A program made the position numbers and the translations under genes. From positions 1,984,001-2,048,000 of the forward strand of contig CAJFCJ010000003.1 of assembly GCA_904063045.1 (NCBI GenBank): 64,000 nucleotides of DNA, written 5' to 3'. Numbering within the stretch: position 1 is the first letter of the stretch; every line of letters starts with the position of its first letter. This stretch comes from Dimorphilus gyrociliatus (lineage: Eukaryota; Animalia; Annelida). Positions 46,901 through 55,242 of this stretch are shown piece after piece. The notes beneath the pieces are model-generated. The model was not told where the DNA came from. It was given only the letters and a program-made list of their open reading frames with translations, and did not search any database.

Positions 46901-48241
46901 TATTTTGCGCGATTTACGAGAGTCATGACTATTTTAAGCGTCTAAATCATTTCTTCCAAGATTTAATAATTAAAGCTTTATTTGTCATTTTCCAACAGGC
47001 CAAGTTTAAATTTGCAACCAAACTTTCTCCAATCATCAGTTCAATGTGCTATTTCGCCTTTCTACGGCCACCAACCTGCTTCGTTGCATACATTAACTTT
47101 GGCGGAGCGTCTTGCTGGTGAATATTTTTTAAATAAAACTAAAACATGTAAGCATGTTAATAAATTATAATTTTCAAGCAGATATCATCGTTGAAGCCCG
47201 GTATGGTGCTCAAAGGAAACAACGTCGGTCAAGGACAGCATTTACTAATGCTCAACTAACAGCTCTTGAAAAAACGTTCGCAAAAACTCACTATCCCGAT
47301 GTGGTTATGAGGGAGCGTTTAGCCATGATGACTCATCTGCCAGAATCAAGAATTCAAGTGTGGTTTAAAAATCGGCGAGCAAAATTTAGAAAGAAGCAGA
47401 GGGGAAGTAAACAAATTCAAAATGTTCCAAAGGAAAGAGATGAGGAAAAGAAGGAAGATTCCGAAGGTAAGGGGATAAAGTAAGGGTAATTCTAAGCTGC
47501 GCTGTAGGGGCTTTACATAGCCGCCAGATTGATTCTTTCCCTTTCGAAAAAGGATTCAGATGAATTTCAGACTTTTTCCTAATAACTAAAGAGCCCTCAA
47601 AAAGCTAGCACTTAGCACAGCAGAGTCTAAATATTCTTATTAACGTATGCATTATGCATTATGCCTAACGTATAAGCTTATCATTAAATAGTATTAAGTA
47701 CTAAATTTATTTTAAAAACTTTGAAAAAGTCTTAAGCGCAATAAAGGAATGTGTAGAAAAATATTTTTTATCCTAATTTAAATATTGAATGTTTTTCCCA
47801 GAAAAATTTAGTTCTAAATCGGATGACAATGACGAGGAGGCCAAGAGTGATACTTCTGAAACATCACCAACTAAATCAGATTCAAATCAGAGTGAATTAT
47901 TTTTCTCAAATAGCTCAGGTAAATTCGGATGAATAATTTTCTCATTTTCTTATTATAGAAATTTTTTATTAGCCAACGCAAGACCTTCCGTCAATCCACA
48001 ATTCTTCAGTAGTCCTCAAATGAATCTACTGGAACAGCAAATGACGCAACCAGCACTTAACCTACTTCAGCGTCACCTACTAACTCAAAGCGGTTATTTG
48101 AGTTGGCCATCTTCAATCTCTTCACCCCTGCCTGTGCCGTCTGCGAACTTTCCACTATTTGGAAGTTCTGTTTTGAATGGAAGAAATTCATCTTCACTTG
48201 GGTTTTTTCCCACAACTAATCGGCAAAAAAGTAATCCATAA
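43913..48241 (+). CDS. DMBX1: Diencephalon/mesencephalon homeobox 1 (paired-like, K50 homeodomain), 5 exons with a 3-kb first intron
   Basis: Exon 1 at 43913-43980 (phase 2) joins 46999-47117 (LTLAERLA), 47182-47466 ([18 protein letters not shown]...[15 protein letters not shown]...[15 protein letters not shown]), 47801-about 47917, and about 47972-48241. The [16 protein letters not shown] motif is characteristic of Dmbx. Confidence 0.92.
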
Positions 48242-48821
48242 AAGAAAAGACGTAACGGCGAAGTAACTTACTTCCAAAGTTGTAGAATAAATATTCACAA
48301 GAAAAAAAACTCTTTTTTCATAATTCAGTTTGTATTTTATTAGTTTATTTCTGTCTTTAAGCAAAAAAAAAATGATAAAAAAATGTCCTAAATTACCTGA
48401 AAATTCTCTTTCTAGCTGATAGATAATGATGTTATCACACAGTATGAATATTTAACTGCACATAAATTAGCTATTGAGATTTATTTCAAATTTTGATCTT
48501 TGTAATATGTAGTTTATTGTCATTGTTAAAGACTTTATTATAGTGACCTATAAAATACCGTATACTATACTTAAAGAGAAAAAAACCAAATATTTAACAT
48601 TACTATTTCTATTGCTTTTTTTCTCTTAATTAAATATTCTTAGCTTATTGGTTTTAAAGAAAATTAATAAATTAACTTGATTTCTACGATGTCTGTCGAT
48701 AATTTTCTTCAGTGTATAGACTTTTAAAAGGGATTTTTTTAAATCAGAAAGATGGCGTTGTTATACATATCTGACTGTTTCGCTAATAGTTGACAGTCTG
48801 TGATCTTTCTAACAGCGCAAA

Positions 48822-49793
48822 ATGCCTATTTCCAGCCCTGATGAGCTGGAAACGGCGCTGGTAGATCTTACTAACAACATGGAAAAGGTATTAGAAACCA
48901 CAATGTCAATTTGGAATGAAACAAAAGACGTTTATGAATTTATAAAAAATCCAGGAAAATTAAGTAAAATGGGAAGTCTTATCGGACTTTACCACCAGTT
49001 TTTCATTCATTGCGAAATAGGTAGTCTAATGGACTTAGAAAGGATCTTTAAACAGTTTTATACAAAATTATCAGTTCAGGAAGCAGTTGCAGGTGTGTTT
49101 TAAATATACTGTATTTATTTATCTTTTCCATTCTATCACTTGATAGACTACGACTTCGTTGAAAGAAAATGGAACAGATTTCTTGAAAATATTGATGATA
49201 AACTAAATCCATCTTATTATAGAATATCTACTGTAAACTCCATTGCACCAATAGAAACACGGTTAAAATCTCTAGATGGACAAACTGTTTTATTAAAAAA
49301 TCTTGTTGAAAAAAGTTCAAGTACTGTCTTGGTCCTATTAAGACATCTTGCTTGAGTTCCGTGACGTCGACATGTCGTCGAACTTACTAACAATATGCAT
49401 AAATTTTCAAACTTGGAAACAAACATCATTGTTATTTCGTTTAGTGGAATGGAAGGTGTTAAACTTTGGAAGAGAGACACCGGTTGTGAATTTCCAGTTT
49501 TTGTTGACGAAGAGAGGATTCTTTACAAGACAATTGGTCTAAAAGTGACTGTTGCAAAAGTTTGGAGCTCAACTTCATTAGGTTACTACGCCGAAGTCTT
49601 AACTAATGGTGGAAAATTAATTAGCCCCTATTCTAACATAAAAGATGACCCTAATCAAATGGGCGGCAACGTGATAATTGATAATACAGGAGTTTATCGA
49701 TTTATTTATAAAAGCAAAACGCCACAAGACAGACCTAGCATGGAAGAATTAGAATCGTCAATTAAATCCTTGCATATTGTTAGTCGAATTTAG
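48822..49793 (+). CDS. SELENOL: Selenoprotein L (thioredoxin-like/AhpC-TSA_2 fold) with a UxxU motif encoded by two in-frame TGA codons; 305 aa if both are read as Sec
   Basis: Exon 48822-49092, 54-nt intron, exon 49147-49793. The frame stays continuous through TGA 49353-49355 and TGA 49362-49364 (VLVLLRHLA-U-VP-U-RRHVVEL), followed by family motifs FPVFVDEERILY and DPNQMGGNVIID, and a downstream SECIS. Confidence 0.93.
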
Positions 49794-49804
49794 ACTGAAT
49801 AACA

Positions 49805-49874
49805 GTATTGAGTCGAATGACAATCGAATATGAAAATCAATTGATGTATTCGATTTGATAATCTATTCCAATAC
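49805..49874 (+). promoter_or_regulatory. Eukaryotic type II SECIS element in the SELENOL 3' UTR
   Basis: ATGA 49817-20 / TGAT 49856-59 quartet; 10-bp helix II AATCGAATAT 49822-31 with GTATTCGATT 49846-55; unpaired AAA 49833-35; mini-stem ATC(AATT)GAT 49836-45; helix I GTATTG 49805-10 with CAATAC 49869-74. Confidence 0.92.
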
Positions 49875-49923
49875 ACCATTTTTAAAATTAGGTAAAATAA
49901 AAAAAACTTTGTATAAAAAAAGT

Positions 49924-52900
49924 TCACTTGCAAATTCCGTTCAAGTATAACGTGGCACTTCCTTTTTCGCAGTAGCAAACCATTCGAGCTGTATATTCCC
50001 CCGCTACTGGTGGGGAGAAAGTGACAGGCAAACTTAAAAAATGCCCGTTTCTGATTGTAACATTCGAACATTTTAAAGAGAAAGGTTCGGAAGGTTTATC
50101 AAAAGTCATTTTTACGGATTTTTTACAACGATTCTTAATGGCCAGCTTTTTAGTTTCGGATTTACCAATACTTGTACAAAAATCAACCGAATTAGGACCG
50201 ATTGAAACACCTTGTATAACAGTTGTTGAATCCGTCGATTGAGAAGATGGTGGTACAGATCTAGCAGGGGCCGTAGCTGATAATAATTCAAACGATTCTC
50301 CTTTCAACGTCACTCTTGAAACACTAGTTTTCCATCTATTCTTGCATTTTACTTCCCATGTTTGAGTAAATAATCCAGAGTCCAGAGGTCGAAATTGAAC
50401 AGTTATCTGATTACAAAAACAATACTATTAAAAATAGTAGTTCCTTATATTTAGTACTTTTACCTTACAAGTAGAGTTACCCTGAGCGATACCTGCTACT
50501 TTTGAAAACTGAAAAACAACGTAAGTCACTCGAAAATAGTCTCGACTGTTAGATGCTTTTGAATAAGGGGGAGCGAAAGGACTCAAACTCCATTCTACAA
50601 TATCTGTTGTGGTATTCTGTAACTCAAATTCTAACTCCTCAAGCCTGCCAGATTTAGCACGACCAAAGTCAACCATTGGTTGAAAAACGAGTAGAGAAGA
50701 ATTTGAGGCTACATTGGTTGGTGCTGCCTTTCGAGAGTCATGGCGATGTTGTGTCGGAGTGGTCTGACTGCCTTCAACAATTTCGACGTCAAATTTCTAA
50801 AAAACATACAGATTAATGATGATAAATGAAAAAAGGAAAATCTTTGTAAAGCAAACCTTTGTCTCTTTATTGCAAACAACGAATACGGAGCCTGTCCACG
50901 GAAATGTTGTAATATCAGCATCTTCGACAACAGAAGCCCTTAATGCAACTGAGGATTTTGGTGAGATATGACCTTTTCCAGGATATATATTAATTGTATG
51001 AGCAGGCCAGTTTGCGTCGAATCGTAAAGTATGAGATGAAGAATTTATAAGTTTTACAGTACTACAGCCTAAATCAGATATTTTGTTTGAACTAATTGAT
51101 ATGGATTTGGGTTCTAGTTGCCAAGATGGTTCATCAGTTTCCCAATAAGCAGGTGGCAACTCCGTATCTTTGGATGAGTCACGTCTAATAGTTGCGCTTA
51201 GCATCCTTGCTTCTTCAAGAGCTGTAACATCATGAGAAGCCTGTAGTGGCTGAAATCGTTGTGTGTCGTTTAGATCAAAGGTTATCAAAAACTTTATCCT
51301 TTTCAAGTCTTGAATAAAAGTCTTAGAGTCAATACGAATTCTAGAAGGAAGCGACTTTTCGGCTGTACAAGAATCCTCATTTCTAAAGTTTCCTGTAAAA
51401 TTCGTATCCGCAAGAATATCATCTCCTTTTATATGAGATCCTGAGCCGTAAGTTTTTTTAAGCATCCTCCTTGCGAATTCCTCCCCATAAAAAACGCACA
51501 AAACTCCACATACAGACTGTTTATCAACAACGAACATCTCATCTACCTTCAATTTGATTTGAATTTCCTTTACTTGATTGGGTAACAGGCAAAATTCATA
51601 ATTTTCCAACTCAATGTGTTCAAACTTTTCTTGACAGTCAGTGTCTCTAAATGCCAATATTTTATTGAAAGAGCACATATTTCCTGCATTTTTTAAAGTC
51701 AGGTAGCATGTGCCTTTTCCATCGGGCCGTATAGTTTCAATTTGTATCATCCCGAAACCATTGTCTGGTCGAAATCTGGTTCCAGGAGCGACAAGTTCAG
51801 CGGAACCAGAGTAGGCATACAACGGTAAAAAACAATTCGTGTGCCAAGATTCCTTAACGGACAGGCCCCCTTCTATGAATATATTTTCCAATTTGCCTGA
51901 CTGATTAGAACAGGAAAGGCTGATTTCTTCTCCTTTATTAGGGGAAAGTACTAGTTCATCAGTACTCTCTACTTTAAATCCGGAACCGCTTTGATGTTTG
52001 ACACTCAATCGTATATCGACTTTCTTTTGACTAGTTGTTTTCAATATTAGTTCTCTCCTCTTAAGCTCTCCTTTCGTGATTCTACCAAACATAAGAGAAT
52101 TCTTATTGGCTTCAATAGTTGGAATTGGTTTAACAATTGCCATTGCATCTATTTCAAAATCTTTATCTCCAGGCTTTCTCCTTAGAACTATAGCACTTTT
52201 AATTTCTGAATTTTCTTCTTCATTTCCAATACAGCTAAATTTGACAGTAATTTCACATTCGTCTTTCGGATTTAGTCTGAAATCGTTAGGTTCAACACGG
52301 AAGCAATTATTCTCAGACATAGTATTAACCTCAATGGGTATAGTTCCAGAATTTTTTACCCTAAATTTCTGTCTAGAAATACTCTCTTTTTCTCTCTTTC
52401 CTTCAAAGACTATAAAACGCAAACTTCTTGTATTTGTATGCAATATAGGACTTCCGACTAATGCCTTTAAAGATATTCTTCCCAAATTTAATGAACTACC
52501 AGGTGTATCTAAATCCAGAGAGAGTATTGCATTCAATTGTAAAGGATTCTGATTTAGGGCGTCCACTAAGGAACATGTACAAAACACAAAGATATGGAGA
52601 ACATTTGCGTCAGGTCTTGAATTGTCAGCCTTTGGAATGACGTAGCTGTCAGTCGTCGGTCGATTCACGTTCGAAGGAGCAAAATAAAAATGTTTTGAAT
52701 TTTCTATAGTTAATTTAACAGGTAGATCACATTTAGAATAATTTCTTAAGGTTAAAAACTTATTTTCACACACATCCCAACACAAGTTTCCGAAATTTAA
52801 TTCAGCAGAAGGGGCAACTTCTATAACAGGTAGTTCAGCTTCAGCAGAAATATATACATAAGTAGCAAACCCTGAAGTGGTGTTTCTTTTTGCAGCTGGA

Positions 52901-55242
52901 ACAACTTCAATTCGAATCTCTCCGACATATAGACCAGCAATTTTTGGAACAAATAAAATTCTTACGTCACGGGTACACCCAGGCTCTATAGTGTCACTGC
53001 TCTTAAATAAAAATGGAACTTCCGAATCTGAAAGTGTTTTACTATCCAGGGTTATTTTGCTGGCAAACAAGGAAACTGACAACCATCGAGAAGTAGGATT
53101 TGTAATGGAAATTAAACTACTGATACTCATACCGACACAAACATTACTATCAAATATGAGTTCTTTAGGAATAACATCTATAAAAACTGGTCCACTTGTG
53201 TTCGGAGGGGTACTTAAAACAGCAGGCGTGCTTTGCCACTGAGGAGCGAATGGTGTATCTGGACTTGGAGTATAATACGAATCTTCAGGCGGGAGAAGTC
53301 CAATACTTAACTTCGTGTCTGGAGCCAATGCTCCCACAGTAAGTTTACTACTTTCAGTTTCATCGTGATATCTTCTATACGAATCATTTGCATTAATAAA
53401 TCCTGATGGCGTCGGTGGAACTTTCATTGTATTAGGAGTGCTAGTCATCTGTTTCTCTCCACTGTTCCTCCTCATGTGCAAACTATGTTCTATTAAATCC
53501 TGCTCTTGTCTCTTGTCTCGTTCTTTCATGCTACCCCTCAAACCTATAGCACTAGGACGAGGCGAAGCCCAATGGCGATCTTCCTCTTTTTCTAAAGCCA
53601 GTTCTATCTCTTTCTTTATGGCTTCTACTGTTGAGTGAGGTATCTTTTTTTTCTCACTCCTCTCTACCGATGCTTTTTTGGATTTTATCAATATTTCGAT
53701 AAGCTTTTGAATATCATCTTCTTGATCAATAACTTCATCTGTTAAATTTTGTGAGGTAACAGGATTTTCCAGCGATAAATGAGGCTCATTCGTCTGATTT
53801 GACCACACAGATGTAGTTGATGTAATTTTACTATCTCCTGAATCTTTTCTGGTGCAATCGTCAGACGGCTTCGATTCAAGACTTTCAGTACTTAATCGGC
53901 AAACTTTCTCGGAATTGCAAGAGAGGCGATGTTCACTCCATTTAGAATCGTTGAATACATCACTATTATTCATATGGTTATCTAAAGGGGTAGGTGTCAA
54001 TGGTCTCTTGAATGGATCAACTTCATCCTCATAATCTAATGCTTTAATACAATTCTCTTTGTCATCACCCTCATTGCTTTCTTTATAAGATGTAGGTTGG
54101 TCAATGAGCGGGGTGGCTTGTCGATGGACAGGTGGAGAAACTATTTCCTTTCCCCAGCTGGGTCGTCTTATTAGATCATTAGCAGTAAGCGAGCCTAGAG
54201 GTTCCGACTTGCTAAACACAGCAGCTTGAAAAGCCTTTTGACCATCAATTTTATCAGATGATGTATACCATTCTTCCCACGAGGCAGCAGTATGCGTTGA
54301 TCCACCCAAAAATTTCGAAACTTCACAGCTATCGTCCTGCTCCTCCGATTCAAGAAATTGTCTCTGTATAATTTATAACTAAAAAAAATGATTTGGTAAA
54401 AACAACACATTACTTCTAGAACTGGATGATCCTGTTTTACTTGTTCTTCGTCAGCATCGAATATCGCTTCGTAATTTTCGCCTGTTAATAATCAAAGAGT
54501 GAACGAACTAAAATACTATTTAACTAATAAATTACCTGAGCAGAATTTTTCGTCACTTTGCTGAGACATATTTTCACCATTCTCATCAAAAAACCCTCGA
54601 TCGTCTGCAAAAAGAAATATTAACACGACTTTTAAAATTATTGAAAAACCTTTACCATATTCCTCACTACCGTCTGATCGCAAATCAATCAGATCCGGTT
54701 GAACAGGTTTTAACGAAACGTTTGTTTTCTCAAACATCATTGAATCCAAACCTCCCTCAAACATAGATGATTGATCTGCTTTGTGATATGTTGGTTGTAA
54801 ATACATAGCAGCCATTCCAGTCTTACTCTGTTTATTATAATTATTATATTGTTATACTTTTATTTTTGTATGTCATCACAGCAAAACAAACTATTAAGTA
54901 CCTCATCAATTGTTTCATCTTTTGATTGCTTTTCAAATATGCTCTTGAGATCCATATCATTTTCGCTATTTTCTTCCATAATTAACTTCCAATCAATTTT
55001 AGGGAGCTTGATTTTTCCTTCAATGAGCGAGGGCTCATTTGAGGCGGTTGCATCTGTATTGTCTTTTAAAAAAGTCATTCAGATGAACTGAAACTATGTA
55101 ACGTGATATATTTCTTACCAAGCGTCGAGAAAGATGAAGTGTCCGCATTTCCTATAAAATCATCTCTGAAATGATGCACACTGACTTTTGAAGATTTCTT
55201 TTTCGTTCAAATGTTGTCTACCTACCCTGAAGCTTCAGCCAT
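49924..55242 (-). CDS. CEP192: Centrosomal protein CEP192/SPD-2 (C-terminal ASH/PapD-like domains), multi-exon with one exon of about 3.5 kb
   Basis: Start MAEASGDDFIGNADTSSF, a long disordered N-terminus, then tandem ASPM/SPD-2/Hydin-like Ig domains (ISITNPTSRWLSV, LTLRNYSKCDLPV, FRVKNSGTIP, VDFGRAK, FELQN); stop at 49924. Confidence 0.82.

What the first reader, a model, noticed from the sequence alone, without database searches (positions are those of the whole stretch)
49321..49400. Hidden di-selenocysteine (UxxU) redox enzyme: two in-frame TGA codons at the active site
The ORF track splits this gene into three pieces (48822-49103, 49140-49355, 49395-49793). After a 54-nt intron the frame is continuous apart from two TGAs three codons apart (CAT CTT GCT TGA GTT CCG TGA CGT CGA CAT), exactly where a thioredoxin-fold CxxC would sit. 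Established: UxxU in this fold defines selenoprotein L, a rare family reported mainly from aquatic animals and known for an intramolecular diselenide bond. Inference: this organism recodes two nearby UGAs using one SECIS, retains Sec machinery despite genome compaction, and automated annotation has probably truncated or split this gene.
Basis: partly seen in the sequence, partly recalled or inferred. Interest (0 to 1): 0.9.

Follow-up and report, generated by a model that had tools for sequence, protein, structure and literature searches.

The report
Selenoprotein L gene with two selenocysteines
This is a genuine, expressed selenoprotein L gene in which two UGA "stop" codons three codons apart are read as selenocysteine with the help of one RNA hairpin just after the gene; it is a well-known gene family in aquatic animals, so this is a sound annotation fix and not a discovery.

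Summary
TGA codons at 49353-49355 and 49362-49364 lie in one reading frame that joins the three ORF pieces. A transcript contig removes the 54-nt intron (49093-49146) and keeps both TGAs.

The 305-codon product reads ...LLRHLA-U-VP-U-RRH.... An AhpC-TSA_2 domain starts directly after the second TGA. An Rfam SECIS_1 hit (36.5 bits, cut-off 35) starts 12 nt after the TAG stop.

Homologues have either TGA (checked in DNA) or Cys at both columns. One 90% cluster holds a protein named selenoprotein L. These columns are the CxxC of solved PRXL2B.

A related species' cDNA (66% amino-acid identity) keeps both TGAs while the codons around them change synonymously. dN/dS is 0.07 downstream of the TGAs, and the SECIS core is 91% identical against 73% for the coding sequence. 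The neighbouring Cep192 gene ends in TGA here and TAA in the relative, so TGA is an ordinary stop in this organism.

The gene is selenoprotein L, already reported in fish, sea squirts, sponges, cnidarians and the annelid Capitella. It is a new member of a known kind, of low to moderate interest.

Not tested here: Sec incorporation itself, the genome-wide Sec machinery, and the state of the public annotation. The scan also noted this stretch and its SECIS in separate first-stage notes.

The parts
48822..49092 (+). Exon 1 of the coding sequence (codons 1-90 plus the first base of codon 91). It encodes the N-terminal region conserved in the family, which has no Pfam model.
   Evidence: ATG ORF. 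An in-frame TAA lies 4 codons upstream (read). The X2 contig covers 48832-49090. The region is collinear with the N-termini of full-length homologues.
49093..49146 (+). 54-nt GT..AG intron, in phase 1.
   Evidence: The spliced contig of run X2 skips 54 nt. The related cDNA L007 reads AVADYDFVERKW across the same junction.
49147..49793 (+). Exon 2 of the coding sequence: the end of the N-terminal region, the UxxU motif, the AhpC-TSA_2 domain and the TAG stop (49791-49793).
   Evidence: dN/dS against L007 is 0.22 upstream and 0.07 downstream of the TGAs.
49353..49355 (+). TGA, codon 160, the first selenocysteine of U-V-P-U.
   Evidence: It is TGA in L007 and in L001, L004 and L005. It aligns with the first Cys of CxxC in Cys homologues.
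49362..49364 (+). TGA, codon 163, the second selenocysteine. It aligns with the second Cys of CxxC and with the peroxidatic Cys of BCP.
49806..49873 (+). SECIS element. Helix I pairs 49806-49810 with 49869-49873. The AUGA is at 49817-49820. Helix II pairs 49822-49832 with 49845-49855. The unpaired AAAA is at 49833-49836. The 3' GA is at 49857-49858.
   Evidence: Rfam SECIS_1 scores 36.5 bits (gathering 35), E 5.5e-05. The orthologous hit in L007 scores 33.1 bits. The core is 90.6% identical between the two species against 73% for the coding sequence. The pairing was read.
49896..49901 (+). AATAAA, the likely polyadenylation signal of the SelL mRNA. It implies a 3'UTR of roughly 120 nt.
   Evidence: Pattern search. 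This is an inference: no read ends were available.

Best explanation
The region 48822-49873 on the + strand is a two-exon selenoprotein L (SELENOL) gene encoding a 305-residue protein. Shown: the mRNA keeps both UGAs. The frame is conserved through and beyond them. The two UGA columns are UGA or Cys in homologues. A eukaryotic SECIS lies 12 nt after the stop. Inferred from the established Sec pathway: SBP2 binds the kink-turn core of the SECIS (AUGA/GA) and brings eEFSec with Sec-tRNA[Ser]Sec to the ribosome. The ribosome then inserts selenocysteine at codon 160 and again at codon 163, using the same single SECIS. Inferred from the family: the two selenols of U-V-P-U take the place of the CxxC of a peroxiredoxin-like thioredoxin fold and cycle between the reduced form and an intramolecular diselenide, as reported for zebrafish SelL. 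The protein is therefore a redox enzyme whose physiological substrate and reductant are still unknown.
For: Both TGAs are in frame. AhpC-TSA_2 scores E 2.8e-12 and begins at profile position 2 right after the second TGA. SECIS_1 is above the gathering score on the right strand. A spliced transcript contig carries both TGAs with no differences. A 97.8%-identical marine metatranscriptome contig downstream of the TGAs has 6 synonymous and 1 non-synonymous change. HMMER against 1.84 billion representatives gave 467 hits. Of the best 150, 101 start just after the motif, 10 read WxxW and 5 read CxxC at the two columns. The W residues are TGA in the DNA of three unrelated loci. One hit's 90% cluster holds 'selenoprotein L [Biomphalaria glabrata]'. 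The protein is collinear over its full length with homologues of 306-335 aa. The related-species cDNA L007 keeps TGA at both codons while the neighbouring codons change synonymously (GTT/GTA, CCG/CCA, CGT/CGA, CGA/AGG). Its pS is 0.64-0.71 and dN/dS is 0.07 downstream. Its SECIS is conserved. TGA is an ordinary stop in this genome: Cep192 ends ...NGICK-TGA here and ...NGVCK-TAA in L007. The motif columns equal the CxxC of PRXL2B 9us9 and ResA. The literature reports two Sec two residues apart, one SECIS and a diselenide (PMC3316567, PMC2397514, PMC13134290).
Against: There is no direct evidence that selenium is incorporated: no proteomics, labelling or ribosome profiling. tRNA-Sec, SBP2, eEFSec, PSTK, SEPSECS and SEPHS2 were not seen, because none lies in this window and the rest of the genome cannot be searched here. 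The whole-window Rfam scan at gathering threshold missed the SECIS. The hit appears only in the 3-kb scan and sits only 1.5 bits above the cut-off. Rfam found no SECIS in two of the distant homologue loci, L004 and L005/L006. Run X2 has no recorded library type, so calling it cDNA rests on the missing intron.
Confidence: 0.93

Rival explanations
1. It is a dead gene: a former CxxC peroxiredoxin-like gene that acquired two nonsense mutations and is decaying.
For: Two in-frame stop codons split the ORF. No protein of this genome was found in the collections for either piece.
Against: Both TGAs are kept in a species whose synonymous sites are near saturation. dN/dS downstream of them is 0.07, lower than the 0.22 upstream. 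A conserved SECIS follows the stop. The gene is transcribed and spliced. Distant homologues carry TGA at the same two columns.
Confidence: 0.01
2. The UGAs are read, but not as selenocysteine. Either near-cognate read-through inserts Trp, Cys or Arg, or TGA is reassigned in this organism.
For: Several database predictions of homologues print W at these codons.
Against: Those W residues come from gene callers that translate TGA as Trp. The loci do not translate to the stored product under the standard stop table. TGA ends Cep192 at a position where the relative has TAA. A SECIS is present and conserved. The family is experimentally established as Sec-containing (PMC2397514 citing Shchedrina 2007).
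Confidence: 0.02
3. Translation mostly ends at the first UGA. The main product would then be a 159-residue N-terminal fragment, and full-length SelL would be a minor or selenium-dependent product.
For: Sec insertion competes with termination in general (established knowledge), and two UGAs 9 nt apart compound the loss. The N-terminal 140 residues are a conserved region in their own right.
Against: The strongest purifying selection is on the part after the UGAs. This explanation concerns efficiency and is compatible with the main explanation.
Confidence: 0.04

Closest known systems
Selenoprotein L (SelL/SELENOL) of zebrafish and other aquatic animals (Shchedrina et al. 2007, PNAS 104:13919, as cited in PMC2397514, PMC3316567 and PMC13134290)
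   Same: Both have a peroxiredoxin-like thioredoxin fold, two Sec residues two positions apart (UxxU), a single SECIS in the 3'UTR and an N-terminal extension. Both occur in aquatic organisms.
   Different: Identity to the full-length Sec-type homologues recovered here is only 25-28%. The motif reads U-V-P-U where most relatives seen here have U-L-P-U or U-D-P-U. The 3'UTR is very short, with the SECIS 12 nt after the stop.
SelL of the annelid Capitella teleta and other invertebrates (Jiang et al. 2012, PMC3473315, Table 1)
   Same: It is the same family in the same phylum, predicted from the genome by an in-frame TGA plus a SECIS.
   Different: It comes from a different annelid lineage. I did not obtain the Capitella sequence, so no direct alignment was made.
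PRXL2B / prostamide-prostaglandin F synthase (SelU family), PDB 9us9
   Same: It has the same AhpC-TSA_2 fold. Its CxxC aligns with the two Sec columns (E 1.6e-12 with a profile of Cys homologues).
   Different: PRXL2B/SelU has at most one Sec (UxxC) and lacks the ~140-residue N-terminal region. The window's piece alone finds no PDB chain.
PRXL2C / AAED1 (Cys-containing relatives)
   Same: Source names of some cluster members are 'peroxiredoxin-like 2C' and 'thioredoxin-like protein AAED1'. CxxC forms such as P0079 and P0125 align over their full length, including the N-terminal region.
   Different: They have Cys in place of Sec and no SECIS is expected. They score lower (E 1e-10 to 1e-12) than the TGA-containing forms (E 1e-17 to 1e-18). 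No tree was built to settle orthology.

Membership tests
Selenoprotein L (SELENOL) | Peroxiredoxin-like thioredoxin-fold domain (Pfam AhpC-TSA_2) | tested here: met
   PF13911 scores E 2.8e-12, 47.5 bits (cut-off 27), over profile positions 2-112 of 114 on the piece after the second TGA.
Selenoprotein L (SELENOL) | Two in-frame UGA codons separated by two codons (UxxU), at the CxxC position of the fold | tested here: met
   The TGAs are codons 160 and 163. A profile of Cys homologues aligns these columns to the CxxC of PRXL2B 9us9 and ResA, and the second column to the peroxidatic Cys of BCP 2cx3.
Selenoprotein L (SELENOL) | Homologues carry Sec (TGA) or Cys at both columns | tested here: met
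   Of the best 150 hits, 10 read WxxW and 5 read CxxC, with a few CxxS or SxxC, among those that cover the columns. W is TGA in L001, L004 and L005/L006. Both codons are TGA in L007.
Selenoprotein L (SELENOL) | A single eukaryotic SECIS element in the 3'UTR | tested here: met
   SECIS_1 scores 36.5 bits at 49806-49873 on the + strand and is the only hit in 48000-51000. Only 130 nt separate the stop from the neighbour's stop. An orthologous SECIS is present in L007.
Selenoprotein L (SELENOL) | Full-length collinearity with family members, including a sequence that a public source names selenoprotein L | tested here: met
   The 305-aa product aligns end to end with homologues of 306-335 aa. P0009 (E 3.4e-22, 41% identity) shares a 90% cluster with KAK6997796.1 'selenoprotein L [Biomphalaria glabrata]'. 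That model itself skips the motif.
Selenoprotein L (SELENOL) | Selenium is actually incorporated and a diselenide is formed | not testable with these tools
   This needs 75Se labelling or mass spectrometry.
Selenoprotein L (SELENOL) | Host genome encodes the Sec machinery (tRNA-Sec, SBP2, eEFSec, PSTK, SEPSECS, SEPHS2) | not tested
   None lies in this window. The only support is unchecked scan notes of other selenoprotein genes in the same genome.
SelU / PRXL2B | A single Sec or Cys in a UxxC/CxxC motif, with no long N-terminal extension, and nearest relatives that are PRXL2B | tested here: not met
   The motif has two Sec codons. A conserved N-terminal region of ~140 aa is present. The nearest relatives are UxxU forms. 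The window piece finds no PRXL2B chain by sequence.
PRXL2C / AAED1 | Orthology with the Cys-containing PRXL2C group | tested here: inconclusive
   Some cluster members carry these names and align over their full length. No phylogeny was made. The Cys forms score below the Sec forms.

The most novel reading that the evidence does not exclude
The whole SelL 3'UTR is only about 120 nt and sits in the 130-nt gap between the stop codons of two convergent genes, SelL and Cep192. This arrangement is conserved in a related species, and in both species a single assembled transcript contig runs across both genes. If the Cep192 transcript runs antisense through the SECIS, sense-antisense pairing could mask the SECIS and couple selenocysteine insertion in SelL to expression of a centrosome gene. 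That would be a new way of regulating recoding.
Probability: 0.04. Interest if true: 0.5.

Novelty: new member of a known kind. Interest (0 to 1): 0.22.

Why it matters
The finding adds one correctly delimited selenoprotein gene to a compact annelid genome: two exons, two Sec codons and one SECIS. It also shows that the Sec-recoding system is under selection there. In practice it is an annotation fix, because gene finders stop at or skip the UGAs. The same fault is visible across the family. Two thirds of the best 150 database homologues are N-terminally truncated ORFs that start just after the UGA pair, and even a model named selenoprotein L omits the motif. For biology the case is ordinary. 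SelL with UxxU and one SECIS has been known since 2007 and was reported in an annelid in 2012.

Tried and rejected
- The word-indexed protein search with the C-terminal piece and with exon 1 found nothing. An exact look-up of the 132-aa ORF found no called gene. The public annotation of this locus therefore could not be examined. I ran no further search on it.
- The whole-window Rfam scan at gathering threshold returned nothing, although the 3-kb scan scores the SECIS above gathering. I attribute this to the speed filters on the larger input.
- ARAGORN found no tRNA in the window.
- The minimum-free-energy fold of the 3'UTR (z -1.97) does not reproduce the SECIS, because the non-Watson-Crick core is not modelled. 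The centroid fold does show helices I and II.
- Rfam found only a weak SECIS in L001 (23.3 bits) and none in L004 or L005/L006. I did not hunt for them by hand.
- phmmer of the C-terminal piece against PDB sequences gave no hit. A profile of Cys homologues was needed.
- The original SelL paper (PMID 17715293, PMC1955791) is not held, so its content is cited through papers that cite it.
- No paper in the library mentions selenoproteins together with Dimorphilus gyrociliatus, and the genome paper does not mention them.
- There is no sign of an extra RNA element at the UGAs: third-position identity around them is about 0.5, like the rest of the gene.
- The weak PrrF and SNORD27 hits were dismissed as noise.
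- No structure was predicted, because the tools do not take a protein read through a stop, and a Cys homologue at 24% identity would have been only a proxy.

Full report
**The observation**

The sequence is as described. CAT CTT GCT TGA GTT CCG TGA CGT CGA CAT lies at 49344-49373, with TGA at 49353-49355 and 49362-49364. All three share one frame. The pattern TGA-N6-TGA is itself common, occurring 73 times in the window on both strands. The case therefore rests on context and not on the pattern.

**Gene structure and expression**

A 6114-nt contig of public run X2 lies on 48832-49090. It skips 54 nt with GT..AG ends (intron 49093-49146) and continues over 49145-50200 without a single difference. 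The intron is thus removed and both TGAs remain in the processed transcript. The library type of X2 is not on record, so reading it as cDNA rests on the missing intron.

Splicing gives a 918-nt reading frame of 305 codons, with TGA at codons 160 and 163 and TAG at 49791-49793. An in-frame TAA lies four codons before the ATG at 48822 (read).

A 363-nt contig from a marine metatranscriptome (X1) covers 49529-49891 at 97.8% identity. Of its seven coding differences, six are synonymous.

**What the protein is**

The 142 residues after the second TGA match Pfam AhpC-TSA_2 (E 2.8e-12, profile positions 2-112 of 114). The domain model therefore starts immediately after the motif.

An exhaustive HMMER search of that piece gave 467 hits at E up to 0.001. 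In an alignment of the best 150 hits:
- 101 begin just downstream of the motif. This is the mark of gene callers restarting after a UGA.
- About 20 are longer models in which the motif segment is missing.
- 10 read WxxW.
- 5 read CxxC, and a few read CxxS or SxxC.

I fetched the DNA of three unrelated WxxW proteins (L001, L004, L005/L006). Each W is a TGA, in contexts such as LLRHFA-TGA-LP-TGA-R.

The full 305-residue product aligns end to end with homologues of 306-335 residues. The alignment includes a ~140-residue N-terminal region that has no Pfam model. Exon 1 therefore belongs to the gene.

One good hit is P0009 (E 3.4e-22, 41% identity). It shares a 90% cluster with a Biomphalaria glabrata protein that NCBI names selenoprotein L. 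That model itself leaves out the motif.

A profile of Cys-containing homologues aligns the two columns to the CxxC of PRXL2B (PDB 9us9) and of ResA. It aligns the second column to the peroxidatic Cys of an archaeal BCP peroxiredoxin.

**The SECIS**

A 3-kb Rfam scan finds SECIS_1 at 49806-49873 on the + strand. It scores 36.5 bits against a gathering score of 35, E 5.5e-05. The element starts 12 nt after the stop. Read, it has these parts:
- Helix I: 49806-49810 pairs with 49869-49873.
- AUGA at 49817-49820, opposite UGAU at 49856-49859.
- Helix II of 11 pairs: 49822-49832 with 49845-49855.
- Unpaired AAAA at 49833-49836.

The apical part can form only a 2-3-bp mini-stem, so I leave form 1 versus form 2 open. 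The whole-window scan at gathering threshold missed the hit, which is a caution about filters. No second SECIS was found.

**Evidence from a close relative**

P0005 (73% identical) led to L007, a 6052-nt transcript contig from another sequencing run. It carries the orthologous gene at 66% amino-acid and about 73-75% nucleotide identity.
- It has the same splice product (AVADYDFVERKW).
- It has the same A-U-V-P-U-R-R-H, with TGA at both codons.
- The codons between and after the TGAs differ synonymously: GTT/GTA, CCG/CCA, CGT/CGA and CGA/AGG.
- Synonymous sites are near saturation (pS 0.64-0.71).
- dN/dS is 0.22 before the UGAs and 0.07 after them.
- Its 3'UTR holds a SECIS_1 hit of 33.1 bits.
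- The SECIS core is 90.6% identical against 73% for exon 2.

This excludes a pseudogene. It shows that the frame is read through both UGAs.

**TGA is an ordinary stop here**

The convergent neighbour on the minus strand is Cep192. Its last exon ends ...LYLNGICK-TGA at 49924-49926. The orthologue in L007 ends ...LYLNGVCK-TAA at the same residue. Reading the two internal UGAs therefore needs a dedicated recoding signal, which the SECIS provides.

**Mechanism**

Shown: a spliced mRNA with two conserved in-frame UGAs, a conserved SECIS, and selection on the downstream peptide.

Inferred from the established eukaryotic Sec pathway: SBP2 bound to the SECIS recruits eEFSec with Sec-tRNA to decode UGA 160 and then UGA 163.

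Inferred from the family: the U-V-P-U pair takes the place of the CxxC of the fold and forms a reversible diselenide. The literature on SelL reports two Sec two residues apart, inserted with one SECIS (PMC3316567). It also reports a diselenide bond and a distribution in fish, invertebrates and marine bacteria (PMC2397514, PMC13134290).

**Comparison and novelty**

Jiang et al. 2012 (PMC3473315, Table 1) list SelL in a sponge, a placozoan, a sea anemone, amphioxus and the annelid Capitella teleta. It was earlier found in Ciona ESTs (PMC2874816).

Earlier follow-up notes of this scan name the genome as the miniature annelid Dimorphilus gyrociliatus. I could not test that. It is consistent with the marine metatranscriptome hit, the 54-nt intron and 33.6% G+C (PMC7854359 gives a median intron of 66 bp). 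The same notes list other candidate selenoprotein genes in this genome, including SelU, SelW, SelO, SelK, a deiodinase and a thioredoxin reductase. These are unchecked.

No paper in the library links this species with selenoproteins. The gene is therefore a new member of a known kind.

**What remains open**

- Selenium incorporation itself.
- The Sec machinery genes.
- The state of the public annotation. No protein of this genome turned up for either piece.
- Whether the SelL and Cep192 3'UTRs overlap on the SECIS within the 130-nt gap between their stop codons.

Noticed in passing
window 49794-49926 and 49924-54309 (-); L007:860-5842: The convergent neighbour is Cep192 (domains D1-D8 across three minus-strand ORFs). 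Its TGA stop at 49924-49926 is only 130 nt from the SelL stop, and the SECIS lies in that gap. The same tail-to-tail arrangement, with a 117-nt gap, is kept in the related species. In both species one assembled transcript contig spans both genes, so the 3'UTRs may overlap antisense.
   Followed up: partly
window 48822-49092 and 49147-49300 (residues 1-140): The N-terminal ~140 residues are conserved across SelL-type and Cys-type homologues, for example the motifs G.Y..F and W..FL..D. They match no Pfam family, and their role is unknown.
   Followed up: partly
database homologues P0001-P0150; P0157, P0009, P0015, P0160: The family is mis-annotated systematically. 101 of the 150 best homologues are ORFs starting just after the UGA pair, and about 20 gene models skip the motif. 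These include Biomphalaria glabrata KAK6997796.1, which is named selenoprotein L but lacks UxxU, and the Trichoplax models. Others print W for TGA.
   Followed up: yes
window 49529-49891: A marine metatranscriptome (run X1) holds a contig 97.8% identical to the end of the gene and the SECIS. One of its differences is in the SECIS (49821 C>T, the variable fourth position of the core quartet). The species or a close strain is therefore present and expressing SelL in an environmental sample.
   Followed up: partly
window 1-64000 against 48000-51000: The Rfam scan of the whole window at gathering threshold reports nothing. A 3-kb scan scores the same SECIS at 36.5 bits, above the gathering score of 35. 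SECIS elements can be lost to the speed filters in large scans.
   Followed up: yes
window 48800-48821: Just upstream of the ATG lies a pyrimidine-rich stretch ending in CAG (tctttctaacag, 48804-48815) that looks like a 3' splice acceptor. It may mark a 5'UTR intron. The transcript contig stops at 48832, so this could not be checked.
   Followed up: no
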